A model generated the notes under the pieces. The model had not been told where the DNA came from, made no database searches, and worked only from the letters and a program-made list of their open reading frames with translations. From NCBI GenBank assembly GCA_053919585.1, contig CM132803.1: a DNA stretch of 64,000 nt; one strand, given 5' to 3'. The position numbers were made by a program, and so were the translations under genes. The stretch is from Euprymna scolopes (lineage: Eukaryota). Positions 1-64,000 of this stretch are shown here, one piece after another. Position 1 is the first letter of the stretch, and each line of letters starts with the position of its first letter.

Positions 1-738
1 TGGCTAACAAATGCTAAATCTGTTCTTTTAAAGCGACATGTACGCGGGAGCAAATACGAGCCCCTAGTCGAGCCTGTAGACCTACTTGAAGTCAATCCTA
101 GCTATGCTCATATCCGTTTCAATAACGGACGGGAGACGACAGTGTCCCTACGCCACTTATCTCCATTGGGTGATAGATCGAGCATTCTAGAGGCAGAAAT
201 AGATCCCGTGCCGGAGAACCAACAGCTACAGGACGTACCTCAGCAGCCCGATTCGGACCCCCTGCCACGAATGCACGAAAACTCTCCCCTCAAGAATTCG
301 GTTCCTACTTCTCCCCAATCAGACGATCCACAGAGGAGATCATCGGAGGACAATGAGGTGCCGAATCTTCGACGCTTTACTAGAGTTCGTCGAAGCCCCC
401 AATATTTAGCTGAAAACTATCTGCTTTGAACTTTTCTTTTCTCTTTTGCTTTGCAGCTTAAACAGAAACCCGCTTCTGCAGTTCCTGGTAACTCTACATC
501 TTAAGATCATCATACGGCCTTGGATTCCTCTGAGTGGCGGAGAATGTGCTGACAAAAGAAGAACTCTCTTCTACGCCTTCCGGAAGCGAATTACTTCCCT
601 TACCGGAAGCGAATTATTTCCCTTTAGTTATTATCCTATGTATGAAATGTAGAACACGTGGACTCGCTTCTCCGTGTTGTTCTTAGTGAAATAAAGCTAA
701 CTTTAAGCTCACTCAGTTCTCCTGTCCTATTTATCACA
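1..738 (+). mobile_element. Ty3/Gypsy family 1, 3' end (integrase C-terminus, PPT, 3' LTR 545-738), copy 1
   Basis: ORF ending ...RRFTRVRRSPQYLAENYLL* at 429; PPT GGCGGAGAA then TGTG...CACA LTR with AATAAA; near-identical to 6404-7304 and 36762-37662; this LTR has an extra 23-bp internal duplication (194 vs 171 bp). Confidence 0.85.
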
Positions 739-739
739 A

Positions 740-773
<34 letters not shown>

Positions 774-806
774 TTATAAATAAATATATTTATATATATA
801 TATATA

Positions 807-2467
807 CAGTTGTCCTCAAAATTATTCATACCCTATACAAAAAAAATTTCTTGTTTTGATTATTCATTTCTGAAAGGTATTATGATGGTACTTCCTTTGT
901 ATCTTTTGTCTACTTGTTATTGCACATAAATCCACATGTGAGTTGGCTAAACCTTATTTTCATAATAATAGATAGGGACCAAAGTTATGTTTTGCGCATG
1001 TTCAGATCAATCATACCCCTGCCAGTACCTAAACAAAAATGTGCTTTTATGATCAACCCCATTCTTTTTACTTCATATTAATGTGCTACCCCTTGTAATC
1101 TTTGTCTTGTAGTTATTTCAAGATGTTTCAATTGAATGAATACCTTTTTTGATGTCAATATAAATAGATTAAAAAAGTTTCTTTGTCCACAGGTTCTGAT
1201 CATCATGGGGAAGAAAAAAGAACTTAGCGAAGACCTACGTCAACGTATTGTGCAAGCACACGGTGAGAGAAAGGGTTACAAGGCTATTGCTAAGCAGTAC
1301 AATGTTCCTGTGGCCACCGTCCAGAGTATAATTAATAAGTATAAGCGGTTCAACACTGTTAAAAACCTCAGTGGACGTGGCAGGAAGCGTAAGGTTTCAA
1401 CCAAACTTGCAAAGAAGATCTGCCGAGAGGTCAGCAAAGATCCCCGAACCACAACCAAGGTCCTACAAAAAGAACTTCACCAGGCAGGGACGATGGTTTC
1501 AAGGTCCACTATCGAGAGAGTTTTGCACAGAGGGGGTCTCCATGGATGCAGGCCTCGAAAGACACCGCTGCTCAAAAAGAATCATGTGAAGGCTCGCCTG
1601 GCCTTTGCTAAAGGCCATATACAGCAAGATTCCAGCTTCTGGTCAACCATCCCGTGGTCTGATGAGACGAAGTTGGAGTTGTTCGGCCACAGAGATACTG
1701 CATACGTATGGATGAAGACAGGAGAAGCATACAATCCAAAGAACACAGTGCCAACCGTCAAGCACGGTGGTGGAAACATCATGCTATGGGGATGCTTCTC
1801 TTCCCACGGTACAGGGAACCTCGTCAGGATCCAGGGAATCATGAGAAAGGAGAACTATATCCAGATCCTTGATGAAAACCTGAAGGAATCTGCAGAGAAG
1901 CTCAAACTTGGCGACAACTGGAAGTTCCAGCAAGACAATGACCCAAAGCATACTGCTAAAGTAGTCCAGAAATGGTTCAAGGATAATGATATCAGCGTCC
2001 TGGAGTGGCCTAGTCAGAGTCCTGACCTCAATCCCATAGAGAACTTATGGCGGGACTTAAAGACCCGAGTGATGGCCAGGAAACTAACTAACCTGACCCA
2101 GCTTGAGTCTTTTGCAATGGAAGAATGGGCCAAAATCCCACAGGAAACGTGTAGTAAGCTTGTGGACACCTATAAGAACTGACTAGAAGCAGTCATAAAG
2201 AACAAAGGCTATGCTATTGACTATTGAAGAAAGAAAATGGACACTGTAAACCTAGGGTATGAATAATTTTGAACATGACTTTTTTTAAAGATCTGTGAAT
2301 AAAATACCCCTGAAACTGAATATTTTTTAATTTGCCTATTGCTGTTATTCTTTCACCTGTTGGTTGCACATAAATCATAAACAAACTTAACAAAATGCTT
2401 TCATTTCATCACAACAATGAATTATGTCAAAAATCAACGAGGGTATGAATAATTTTGAGGCCAACTG
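807..2467 (+). mobile_element. Tc1 (DD34E) DNA transposon, full length 1661 bp, IR/DR type, copy 1
   Basis: 27-bp TIRs CAGTTG(T/G)CCTCAAAATTATTCATACCC, TA on both sides; inner repeats of the TIR core at 997-1018 and 2255-2277. Confidence 0.95.
1205..2227 (+). pseudogene. Tc1 transposase (340 codons, premature TGA at 2180-2182)
   Basis: MGKKKELS start, paired-like HTH, GRKRK, WSDETK / QQDND / NPIENL with 34 residues between D and E; reading through the TGA gives LEAVIKNKGYAIDY* at 2225-2227. Confidence 0.93.
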
Positions 2468-2476
2468 TATATATAT

Positions 2477-62845: not shown

Positions 62846-62879
<34 letters not shown>

Positions 62880-63190
62880 CAATGCAAACATAGTTCTAGC
62901 AGATAAAACCAAGGACATTTATAGTATGGACTTCAGTACATATCACAATCTCATTCAAGGCGATCTTAATAAAAAAATATAAAGTCAAATGAAGAGGATC
63001 TCTATAGAATAAATTTACAGGCATTAAAGCTATGTGAAAAAAATGAATATACAGGATAAAATAGAAGTTTATAGCCCCCCCCCCCCCCGAGCCTAGATTT
63101 TTGTTGAAAGATCACAAACCTGACTTCAATAAACTTAGTATTAGATTAACTGCACCTTGCATTTCCAATTTAGGTAACACAAGCAAAATC
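62410..63190 (+). mobile_element. Decayed Penelope-like RT N-terminal fragment
   Basis: ADKTKDIY and LLKDHKPDFNK..IRL..P..SNLGNTSKI resemble the ADK and KDHK/RLINP motifs of Penelope-like RTs; broken by poly-A and poly-C runs. Confidence 0.6.
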
Positions 63191-63368
63191 TAAAATTGTC
63201 GGAATGATTCCGAAAAAATTGCAGCACTATTGAAAAATACACAAGATGATGCAAACTTTTTTCCCTTGTTATTTTGGTTTTGTAATTGTATATATATATA
63301 TATATATATATCAAAACTGGTAATTAGTAAAAACCTGAAGAGAGTGCTCAATACTGCTCCAGAGCAAT

Positions 63369-63599
63369 TATGTGTTTTATTTTTTATTACCGTTTTATCT
63401 GTTTGGTTACATATGTTTTGGATGTTGAACCATGTTTATGATCCAACAGCCTCATCAGACCTTACAGAAACACTTCTTCCAAAATACTAACAACCATTTC
63501 TGTAAGGTCTGACGAGGCTGTTGGATCGTAAACATGGTCCAACATCCGAAACATATGTAACCAAACAGATAAAACGGTAATGAAAAAATAAAACACATA
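63369..63599. repeat. ~102-bp inverted repeat (63369-63470 / 63497-63599), 26-bp spacer, each arm carrying a hammerhead motif
   Basis: Direct reverse-complement match with about 5 differences. Confidence 0.95.
63499..63569 (+). ncRNA. Type I hammerhead ribozyme
   Basis: ucugu-aa-ggu-CUGACGA-gg.uguuggaucgu(aaac)augguccaaca.cc-GAAA-cauaug-UA-acc-aa-acaga: complete core, long stem II, palindromic ACAUAUGU stem III, GUA cleavage triplet at 63557-63559. Confidence 0.85.
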
Positions 63600-63643
63600 C
63601 ATATACATATCTATATATATATACATATATAAAGTAGTAGCAT

Positions 63644-64000
63644 TTGTGTGTGTGTGTGTGTGTCTGTCTGTCTGTGTACAACTCTCCTACAGGCCAAACC
63701 ACTGGAGCAATCATGACCAAAGTTGGTATGATGATGGTCACTGACCGATGTATGGTGCGTGCCATTTTTCAAGGTCAAAGGTCATTGTCTATTAAGGTCA
63801 AAGCCTATAAATATATAATCTTCTAAAGACTAAACCACTTGACTAACCATGACGAAACCTTGCATGATGATAGTCTTTAACCTAAGGATAGTACACACTA
63901 ATTTTCAATGTCAAGGTCAAAAGTCATAACCTATCAAGATCATTGCCTGTGTGTGTATACTGAACTACAAGCCAAACCACTGGATTGATCATAACCAAAC
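63644..64000. repeat. (TG)n/(CTGT)n microsatellite followed by ~139-bp diverged tandem units with AAGGTCA motifs (Helentron/HINE-like)
   Basis: AAACCACT..CATGACCAAA-like block recurs near 63690, 63828, 63968; repeated AAGGTCAAAGGTCA; truncated by window end; family assignment is inference. Confidence 0.5.

What the first reader, a model, noticed from the sequence alone, without database searches (positions are those of the whole stretch)
1..64000. About 20 independent TE insertions all face the same strand: flamenco-like unistrand piRNA cluster candidate
Seen: Tc1, DD41D, hAT, Transib, Copia, two BEL families, several Gypsy families, three LINE pieces, Penelope pieces and solo LTRs are all + oriented, including DNA transposons; the only minus-strand items I found are a ~185-bp gag scrap and one hammerhead arm. 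With 20 independent random insertions the chance is about (1/2)^19. Established: unistrand piRNA clusters accumulate TE fragments antisense to a long precursor. Inference: a minus-strand precursor here would give antisense piRNAs against nearly every TE superfamily.
Basis: partly seen in the sequence, partly recalled or inferred. Interest (0 to 1): 0.75.

Follow-up and report, generated by a model that had tools for sequence, protein, structure and literature searches.

The report
Same-strand transposon domain, piRNA-cluster candidate
This window lies inside a stretch of at least 218 kb where transposons of every class point the same way, which is how a one-strand piRNA (transposon-silencing) locus looks, but about 40% of the window is recent duplication and no RNA data could be reached to show the locus is transcribed.

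Summary
The orientation claim holds; the independence claim does not. Every recognisable TE coding domain in the window is on the + strand (Tc1, Penelope-like, BEL/Pao, hAT, LINE, Copia, Transib, Gypsy). No minus-strand TE coding fragment was found. But about 42% of the window is recent direct duplication. The '11-kb repeat' is one BEL/Pao element with a nested hAT, amplified as an LTR-internal-LTR array, and a Penelope+Tc1 block occurs three times. I count about 14 independent insertions, not 20 (14:0, p = 1.2e-4). The signal grows with context. From -100 kb (edge of my data) to +118.7 kb I count about 44 plus-strand insertions against 2-3 minus-strand ones (p = 2.5e-10), including 11:0 for DNA transposons. 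Orientation turns mixed (4:4) beyond +122 kb, so there is a sharp right-hand boundary where a minus-strand precursor would have to start. No host-gene domain was seen in the 264 kb. This architecture fits a unistrand piRNA cluster better than an ordinary intron. Earlier notes of this scan report at least eight similar domains elsewhere in this genome, also without RNA evidence.

The parts
1..64000 (.). Part of a co-oriented TE domain that runs from at least -100 kb to about +118.7 kb in window coordinates (G000:C21 706-925 kb). All orientable TEs in the window are on +.
1..2754 (+). Block S1, copy a (starts at -1125): Penelope-like fragment, then Tc1, then a piece of BEL LTR. Same junctions as copies b and c, so a segmental duplicate.
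1136..2179 (+). Tc1/mariner transposase, open 348-aa ORF (HTH_Tnp_Tc3_2, HTH_SB, DDE_3). Duplicate copies at 7682-8593 and 38052-38906.
2753..5458 (+). Two tandem copies (offset 1265 bp) of the BEL/Pao 3' part (DUF5641 integrase tail plus LTR).
5460..9299 (+). Block S1, copy b: Penelope-like ORFs (fam7/16, GIY-YIG 5924-6211, fam11 6356-7015), Tc1 at 7682-8593, LTR piece starting at 9040.
9640..9951 (+). Scrap of a Tc1-like DDE_3 transposase (weak, E 1e-3); lies in a stretch duplicated at 40018-41258.
10615..13530 (+). BEL/Pao pol (Peptidase_A17, RT) with an internal deletion, ending in a 535-bp LTR at 12998-13530. First member of the LTR-internal-LTR array.
13531..24728 (+). BEL/Pao array unit 1: gag-side ORFs (fam29/17/18), nested foldback plus hAT, ORFs fam19/34/20, Peptidase_A17, RT, DUF5641, LTR 24196-24728.
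15789..17268 (.). Foldback/MITE-like element with ~250-bp inverted arms at 90%. It accounts for all inverted repeat pairs in the window. Duplicate at 26989-28469.
17224..19861 (+). hAT transposase (zf-C2H2_12, DUF4371, Dimer_Tnp_hAT) nested inside the BEL element. Same insertion in unit 2 at 28435-30876.
24729..35816 (+). BEL/Pao array unit 2, 97.9% identical to unit 1 over 11.9 kb including the nested hAT. A duplicate, not a new insertion.
35818..38894 (+). Block S1, copy c (99.3% to copy b).
39308..39867 (.). Tandem repeat of about 78-83 bp that interrupts S1 copy c.
   Evidence: offsets 77, 155, 242, 329, 416
42617..43039 (+). DUF7041 gag-like fragment. In the left flank the same family is followed by RVP and Gypsy-type RT.
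43825..45529 (+). LINE fragment (endonuclease plus RT-family ORFs); 87% identical copy at +114.0 to +115.6 kb.
45526..46656 (+). Copia pol fragment (Pol_BBD, gag_pre-integrs, rve); at least 19 dispersed copies at 98% on both strands elsewhere.
49276..52605 (+). Gypsy gag-protease ORFs (49276-50178 and 51966-52605, same family) split by a Transib/RAG1-like element (50055-51990; at least 10 dispersed copies at 96-99%).
55157..55623 (+). Retroviral-type protease fragment (family of the RVP ORF in the left flank).
56963..62408 (+). Gypsy element with 244-bp LTRs (56963-57206 and 62167-62408, 97.1%), protease, RT and RNase H at 57765-60072.

Best explanation
The window is an internal piece of a unistrand piRNA-cluster-type locus of at least 218 kb. 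Shown: about 44 independent insertions from all TE classes (LTR: BEL/Pao, Gypsy, Copia; LINE; Penelope-like; DNA: Tc1, hAT, Transib) have their coding strand on +, against 2-3 on -. The run ends sharply at +118.7 to +122.9 kb (C21 about 924.7-928.9 kb), beyond which orientations are mixed. Inferred: a Pol II promoter in or near that boundary drives a long minus-strand precursor leftwards through the TE pile. The precursor is antisense to nearly every TE and is processed into antisense piRNAs. Insertions in the productive orientation are kept. Sense insertions are lost because they make no useful guides or bring terminators. Shown: the locus also grows by recombination between LTRs and other repeats. 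One BEL/Pao element with a nested hAT is present as an LTR-internal-LTR array, and a Penelope+Tc1 block occurs three times. That multiplies sequence already captured without adding new insertions.
For: All TE domains in the window are on + and none is on -. Over 264 kb, 139 plus-strand ORFs of >=130 aa hit 37 Pfam families, nearly all TE domains. The 42 minus-strand ORFs hit only RVT_1, in 3 ORFs, all beyond +144 kb. tblastn with all ORFs as probes finds one true minus-strand TE segment between -100 and +116 kb, and several beyond +122 kb. Repeat pairs in the 264 kb are 74 direct and 18 inverted, and the largest inverted pairs have a partner beyond +137 kb. Manual element count: domain 44:3 (p = 2.5e-10), DNA transposons 11:0 (p = 1e-3), outside 4:4, Fisher p = 0.006. 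The TE families are young and dispersed on both strands elsewhere, so the bias belongs to the locus and not to the families. No non-TE Pfam domain was seen, and the PWWP-bearing ORF is itself multi-copy. The size and layout match published flam-like clusters of 227-1,085 kb with TEs opposite to transcription (PMC10643416). piRNA clusters and ubiquitous PIWI expression are documented in molluscs (PMC6128900).
Against: No promoter was identified in the boundary gap. The minus strand shows no depletion of poly(A) signals beyond what base composition predicts. Short host exons could not be detected with the tools used, so a giant intron remains possible. One minus-strand TE lies only about 20 kb from the putative 5' end. 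The element count is hand-curated and could shift by a few either way.
Confidence: 0.5

Rival explanations
1. The domain is a giant intron, or the body of a long non-coding RNA, of an ordinary minus-strand transcription unit. TEs inserted in sense to the host transcript are removed because they bring splice and poly(A) signals, which leaves antisense (+ strand) copies. No piRNAs need be made.
For: A sharp boundary at one end would fit a first exon and promoter. Short exons cannot be seen with ORF and Pfam scans. In a 5.9-Gb genome very long introns are plausible.
Against: From general knowledge, not tested here: antisense bias in introns is moderate and weak for DNA transposons. Here it is about 94% overall and 11:0 for Tc1, hAT, Transib and other DNA elements. 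At least 218 kb contains no recognisable host domain on either strand. No depletion of poly(A) signals on the minus strand was seen, which such selection would also predict.
Confidence: 0.27
2. The apparent bias comes mostly from duplication plus chance: a few co-oriented TEs were copied many times by segmental or LTR-mediated duplication, or by false duplication of haplotypes in the assembly.
For: About 42% of the window is duplicate copy at 96-99.3%, and further local duplications exist in the flanks.
Against: After collapsing every duplicate the window is still 14:0 and the domain 44:3. The 21 kb at 42.7-64 kb carries 9 co-oriented elements of different superfamilies (W6-W14) and, apart from short LTR-type repeats, no internal duplication. 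There are no N gaps, and the LTR-internal-LTR layout is a natural recombination product.
Confidence: 0.05
3. The bias reflects an orientation-specific insertion or retention process unrelated to transcription of the locus, such as replication-fork direction or chromatin polarity. It would apply to large domains throughout this genome.
For: Earlier notes of this scan list at least eight similar co-oriented domains in the same genome, so the phenomenon is recurrent.
Against: No known mechanism orients cut-and-paste, target-primed and integrase-mediated insertions alike. The abrupt switch to 4:4 within about 4 kb is not expected from replication domains. Recurrence is equally what a set of piRNA clusters would give; they cover 0.27% of the Lymnaea genome (PMC6128900).
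Confidence: 0.08

Closest known systems
flamenco and flam-like unistrand piRNA clusters of Drosophila (van Lopik et al. 2023, PMC10643416)
   Same: A TE pile of hundreds of kb with nearly all insertions in one orientation; nested and truncated copies of many families; a sharp end where a promoter would sit; few wrong-way insertions; internal duplications.
   Different: In Drosophila the strand bias is carried only by Gypsy elements; here it covers BEL/Pao, Gypsy, Copia, LINE, Penelope-like and DNA transposons. No promoter, transcript, small RNA or synteny has been shown here. The organism is not an insect (earlier scan notes call it a mollusc; I did not verify this).
proTRAC-defined piRNA clusters of molluscs (Jehn et al. 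2018, PMC6128900)
   Same: Possibly the same phylum (not verified). TE-rich loci that give TE-antisense-enriched small RNAs, with PIWI expressed in germline and soma.
   Different: Those clusters were defined from small-RNA reads. This one is defined only from DNA architecture, and its size (at least 218 kb) and purity of orientation have no read support.
Antisense-biased TE content of long introns
   Same: One-strand excess of TEs opposite to a transcription unit.
   Different: The bias here is much stronger, includes DNA transposons, and no exons or host domains were found in 264 kb.
Tandem LTR-retrotransposon arrays (LTR-internal-LTR-internal-LTR) made by unequal recombination
   Same: In 10.6-35.8 kb, 535-bp BEL/Pao LTRs alternate with internal regions. 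Both full units carry the same nested hAT, so the array formed after the hAT inserted.
   Different: This explains only the duplication inside the window, not the co-orientation of unrelated families.

Membership tests
Unistrand piRNA cluster (general) | Strong one-strand orientation bias of TE insertions over tens to hundreds of kb | tested here: met
   Window 14:0; domain (-100 to +118.7 kb) about 44:3, p = 2.5e-10; tblastn and Pfam on both strands
Unistrand piRNA cluster (general) | Many unrelated TE families, nested and truncated (a trap, not one amplified element) | tested here: met
   37 Pfam families on +; at least 8 superfamilies; nesting of hAT in BEL and Transib in Gypsy
Unistrand piRNA cluster (general) | Bias is local, with a defined end, not genome-wide | tested here: met
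   4:4 beyond +122 kb; inverted repeat pairs appear only there; family copies elsewhere lie on both strands
Unistrand piRNA cluster (general) | Transcription from one strand, from a discrete promoter, antisense to the TEs | not testable with these tools
Only a candidate zone at +118.7 to +122.9 kb was located.
Unistrand piRNA cluster (general) | Produces 24-32-nt, 1U-biased piRNAs mainly from one strand | not testable with these tools
   No small-RNA data could be reached
Unistrand piRNA cluster (general) | Not simply the intron of a protein-coding gene | tested here: inconclusive
   No non-TE domain among 181 ORFs of >=130 aa, nor among 58 ORFs of >=75 aa at the boundary. The PWWP ORF is multi-copy. 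Short exons are invisible to this test.
flamenco-like cluster in the strict Drosophila sense | Enrichment and strand bias specific to Gypsy/ERV elements | tested here: not met
   The bias covers all classes, including 11:0 DNA transposons, versus Gypsy-only bias in PMC10643416
flamenco-like cluster in the strict Drosophila sense | Synteny or conservation of the locus between related species | not tested
   No related genome is available in the tools
BEL/Pao LTR retrotransposon (the 11-kb repeat unit) | Peptidase_A17 protease, RT, integrase with DUF5641 tail, flanking direct LTRs | tested here: met
   Peptidase_A17 E 4.5e-23, DUF5641 E 6e-22; 535-bp direct LTRs at 96%; an uninterrupted copy of the family at +93.8 to +97.1 kb

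The most novel reading that the evidence does not exclude
This large genome defends itself with many very large unistrand clusters that select antisense orientation for every TE class, DNA transposons included, unlike the Gypsy-only bias of Drosophila flam. These clusters also expand their output by LTR-mediated tandem amplification of TEs already captured, such as the BEL+hAT array and the triplicated Penelope+Tc1 block here.
Probability: 0.3. Interest if true: 0.65.

Novelty: new member of a known kind. Interest (0 to 1): 0.45.

Why it matters
If small RNAs confirm it, this would be a unistrand piRNA cluster outside arthropods and vertebrates, of at least 218 kb, with a mapped 5' boundary. 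Its orientation purity extends to DNA transposons. That would make testable whether selection for antisense capture is a general animal strategy rather than a feature of Drosophila follicle cells and Gypsy elements. It would also allow a test of whether clusters grow by duplicating captured elements. Taken together with the other co-oriented domains noted in this genome, it would give a DNA-only way to predict piRNA source loci in giant, TE-rich genomes. If small RNAs are absent, the locus becomes an unusually clean example of transcription-coupled orientation selection on all TE classes.

Tried and rejected
The left end of the domain is therefore unknown, and no random-region control could be fetched.
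'Mollusc' comes only from earlier scan notes.
- Rfam at gathering threshold on all 264 kb gave 0 hits, and ARAGORN found 0 tRNAs. Rfam at E <= 0.05 on the window gave only weak miRNA-like hairpin hits, some on both strands, and no hammerhead.
- Poly(A)-signal depletion on the minus strand: none beyond base composition.
- CpG observed/expected near the boundary: somewhat higher at +124 to +140 kb, but the region is AT-rich and this is uninformative.
- The minus-strand ORF at -3756..-3229 was rejected as an exception. It overlaps a + strand zf-RVT ORF, and nearly all its genomic copies carry an in-frame TGA.
- Minus-strand ORFs in three frames at -20.9..-19.3 kb and +108.1..108.9 kb were not counted as TE evidence: they have no Pfam family and no related ORF in the 264 kb. 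Overlapping ORFs in three frames suggest simple or tandem repeats, but this was not checked.
- PDB sequence search and the protein atlas did not identify the minus-strand TE at +98.5 kb.
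Full report
SCOPE AND LIMITS
- The window is G000:C21:806001-870000. It lies 0.8 Mb from the start of a 126.5-Mb contig in a 5.9-Gb assembly.
- I obtained 100 kb of flank on each side.
Nothing in this report therefore rests on RNA data.
- I did not verify the organism. Earlier notes of this scan call it a mollusc.
- All coordinates below are window coordinates. Negative values, and values above 64,000, lie in the flanks.

1. THE OBSERVATION

Orientation is confirmed.
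- Pfam scans of non-redundant ORFs put every TE domain in the window on the + strand:
  - Tc1 transposase, 1136-2179, open 348-aa ORF.
  - A GIY-YIG fragment of a Penelope-like element, 5924-6211.
  - A DDE_3 scrap, 9640-9951.
  - BEL/Pao Peptidase_A17, 10796-12356, and DUF5641, 23468-24049.
  - hAT, 17224-19861.
  - A DUF7041 gag-like fragment, 42617-43039.
  - A LINE endonuclease, 43825-44550.
  - Copia, 45526-46656.
  - A RAG1-like/Transib piece, 50862-51260.
  - Gypsy, 51966-52337 and 57765-60072.
- The ten longest minus-strand ORFs have no significant family; the only match is a sub-threshold ZSWIM1-3 RNaseH-like hit, E 0.0094.
- With all ORFs of at least 100 aa from the 264 kb as tblastn probes at a relaxed threshold, the window gets 386 hits on + and 6 on -. 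All six are palindromes or terminal inverted repeats.
- Non-coding repeats agree. Of 49 repeat pairs in the window, 44 are direct. The 5 inverted pairs all belong to one foldback element at 15789-17268 and its duplicate.

Independence is not confirmed.
- 1-42.7 kb is a nest of recent direct duplications:
  - 12689-24612 equals 23909-35816 (11.9 kb, 97.9%).
  - 4018-8530 equals 34376-38894 (99.3%).
  - 1-2754 equals 6590-9299 (97.7%).
  - 10615-12694 occurs three times (99%).
- ORF-family mapping explains the structure. The 11-kb unit is one long BEL/Pao element: LTR, ORF families 29/17/18, then 19/34/20, Peptidase_A17, RT, DUF5641, LTR.
- An independent copy at +93.8 to +97.1 kb has families 17-18-19-20-A17 contiguous. 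The 4.8 kb between families 18 and 19 in the window is therefore a nested insertion of the foldback element plus hAT.
- Both full units carry the same nested hAT inside a single 97.9% alignment. The history is one BEL insertion, one hAT insertion, then amplification into an LTR-internal-LTR-internal-LTR array. The 535-bp LTRs are at 12998-13530, 24196-24728 and 35400-35816.
- A composite block (Penelope-like ORFs, Tc1, LTR piece) occurs three times with identical junctions: -1125..2754, 5460..9299, and 35818..38894 continuing at 40018..40797.
- About 42% of the window is duplicate copy. I count about 14 independent orientable insertions, all on +. That gives a two-sided p of 1.2e-4 rather than (1/2)^19.

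2. WHAT THE SURROUNDINGS SHOW

The bias is much larger than the window.
- ORFs of at least 130 aa number 149 on + and 45 on - over the 264 kb.
- Pooled Pfam scans gave 37 families for 139 plus-strand ORFs: RVT_1 x11, Peptidase_A17 x8, Tc1 HTH x7, RNase H x5, hAT x4, and others.
- For 42 minus-strand ORFs the only family was RVT_1, in 3 ORFs. Those three lie at +144.6 to +145.3 kb and +161.7 to +163.2 kb.
- tblastn with every ORF as probe found one true minus-strand TE coding segment between -100 kb and +116 kb, at -39.3 to -38.2 kb. It found several beyond +122.9 kb.
- Self-alignment of the 264 kb gave 74 direct and 18 inverted repeat pairs. The largest inverted pairs all have one partner beyond +137 kb.

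Element count.
- Curating the ordered ORF map (with labels), I count about 44 independent + insertions between -100 and +118.7 kb: 18 in the left flank, 14 in the window, 12 in the right flank.
- Three possible minus-strand exceptions lie inside the domain:
  - M1, at -39.3..-37.4 kb, has a 504-aa ORF. Its protein-atlas look-alikes carry HTH_animal, RVT_1 and GIY-YIG, which is the Penelope-like architecture. It has a + partner at -36.4 kb and a 311-bp inverted repeat. This fits the head-to-head pairs that Penelope-like elements are known to form, so it may be one event with its + partner.
  - M2, at +98.5..99.4 kb, has a 273-aa ORF of a dispersed family. Copies are 82-97% identical and relatives of about 620 aa are intact. 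Its type is unknown.
  - M3, at -94.3..-93.8 kb, has a 175-aa ORF of an old dispersed family. Its true coding orientation is uncertain.
- Statistics: 44:3 gives p = 2.5e-10. DNA transposons alone (Tc1-like, hAT, Transib and others) are 11:0, p = 1e-3.
- Beyond +122 kb I count 4 + and 4 -. Fisher's test of domain against outside gives p = 0.006.

The right boundary.
- The last + element is a very abundant young TE at +118.2..119.4 kb, with at least 150 copies at 90-97%.
- The first - element is a LINE fragment at +122.9..123.5 kb.
- The right boundary is therefore a gap of about 3.5 kb, at C21 about 925.4-928.9 kb.

No host gene was seen.
- No non-TE Pfam domain appeared in either pooled scan.
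- The only odd domains are SCAN with a zinc knuckle, which is gag-like, and PWWP. The PWWP ORF has at least 20 dispersed copies.
- A pooled scan of 58 ORFs of at least 75 aa from +119.3 to +152 kb found only TE domains, apart from one chance-level Prolamin_like match at E 0.009.
- Rfam and tRNA scans were empty.

The TE families are young and dispersed.
- The Copia piece has at least 19 copies at 98% elsewhere, Transib at least 10 at 96-99%, and Gypsy is at 94-95%.
- These copies lie on both strands elsewhere. The co-orientation is therefore a property of this locus.

3. HOW IT MOST LIKELY WORKS
- The best-supported reading (confidence about 0.5) is a unistrand piRNA-cluster-type locus.
- Under this reading, a promoter in or near the +119.4..122.9 kb gap drives a minus-strand precursor leftwards for at least 218 kb.
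- Every TE is read antisense, so processing would yield antisense guides against all classes.
- Selection keeps productive (antisense) insertions and removes sense ones.
- Shown: the architecture, the extent, the boundary, the class-independence and the duplication history.
- Inferred: the promoter, the transcript, the processing and the selection.
- This matches published flam-like clusters in size (227-1,085 kb), in TE orientation opposite to transcription, and in the rarity of sense insertions (PMC10643416).
- It differs in that Drosophila clusters show the bias only for Gypsy elements.
- piRNA clusters and ubiquitous PIWI expression are documented in molluscs, with 307 clusters covering 0.27% of the Lymnaea genome (PMC6128900).

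4. RIVALS
- **Giant intron or long non-coding unit on the minus strand that makes no piRNAs (about 0.27).** It would explain a one-sided boundary and cannot be excluded without transcripts. Against it: from general knowledge, antisense bias in introns is moderate and weak for DNA transposons, while here it is 94% overall and 11:0. No exon-like domain was found in 264 kb.
- **Duplication plus chance, or assembly duplication (about 0.05).** Duplication is real and lowers the window count. But the bias survives collapsing, and the largely non-duplicated 42.7-64 kb part alone holds 9 co-oriented elements of different superfamilies.
- **A transcription-independent polarity of insertion or retention (about 0.08).** It is suggested only by the recurrence of such domains in this genome. 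No known mechanism fits all transposition chemistries, and the switch within about 4 kb argues against replication-scale causes.
- One result counts against both transcription-based readings: the minus strand shows no depletion of AATAAA-type signals beyond base composition.

5. NOVELTY AND VERDICT
- Unistrand clusters are a known kind of locus. This would be a new member, with the notable variant that orientation purity covers all TE classes.
- The scan found the same pattern before on other DNA of this genome: at least eight notes, of which six had follow-ups and none had RNA evidence. I used those notes only as leads.
- This report adds four things: the corrected count of independent events, the BEL+hAT tandem-array explanation of the internal repeats, the extent of at least 218 kb, and a right-hand boundary narrowed to about 3.5 kb where a start site can be sought.
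- Interest is 0.45. The prediction is well-formed and testable, but it is unproven and not categorically new.

Noticed in passing
window 10615-35816: BEL/Pao element amplified as an LTR-internal-LTR-internal-LTR array. Both full units carry the same nested foldback plus hAT. Unit identity is 97.9%, while the LTR copies are about 96% alike.
   Followed up: yes
window 15324-15413 and 26522-26611: Perfect-looking hairpin that scores on both strands to miRNA precursor models (mir-2329, mir-9209; 45-48 bits, far below the gathering score of 90). It lies between the BEL gag-side ORFs and the nested foldback element. Probably a TE palindrome rather than a miRNA.
   Followed up: partly
window 50032-50097: Short palindrome at the Gypsy-gag/Transib junction; it gives reciprocal tblastn hits on the opposite strand. 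This is the place another note of the scan calls a hairpin footprint.
   Followed up: no
window 39308-39867: Tandem repeat with a period of about 78-83 bp and about 7 copies at 88-95%. It interrupts the third copy of the Penelope+Tc1 block and contains a 179-aa minus-strand ORF that is a repeat artefact.
   Followed up: partly
window 63369-63599: Rfam reported no hammerhead ribozyme here even at E <= 0.05. It gave only weak miRNA-like hairpin hits at 63442-63525 (-) and 63593-63659 (+).
   Followed up: partly
L016-L017 (window coordinates -20.9 to -18.3 kb): Stretch with G+C of 0.25 and long open frames in all three frames on both strands (up to 543 aa). This suggests a simple or tandem repeat. 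No TE homology was found.
   Followed up: no
L011:8054-9537 (window coordinates -71.9 to -70.5 kb): A PWWP-domain ORF (E 1.9e-5) that is multi-copy and dispersed: at least 20 copies at 82-97%, one inside a 944-aa open frame elsewhere. This looks like a TE family carrying a chromatin-reader domain.
   Followed up: partly
L018:6244-6771 (window coordinates -3.8 to -3.2 kb) and its genomic copies: The 3' part of this LINE-like family occurs elsewhere in head-to-tail arrays with a period of about 3.78-3.80 kb (for example three copies on C28 at 45.50 Mb and three on C21 at 21.50 Mb).
   Followed up: no
L022:4538-5356 (window coordinates +98.5 to +99.4 kb), minus strand: 273-aa ORF of a dispersed family with many intact relatives of about 620-630 aa at 30-34% identity, including a cluster of copies on C11 at 4.01-4.05 Mb and on C41 at 9.50-9.56 Mb. 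It has no Pfam, PDB or atlas match. It is either an unclassified TE or a multigene family.
   Followed up: partly
L015-L016 (window coordinates -34.9 to -27.6 kb): 1.87-kb direct repeats at 98%, each containing Tc1 ORFs, flank a 3.4-kb RT element. This is either two Tc1 copies or a local duplication around a LINE-like insertion.
   Followed up: no
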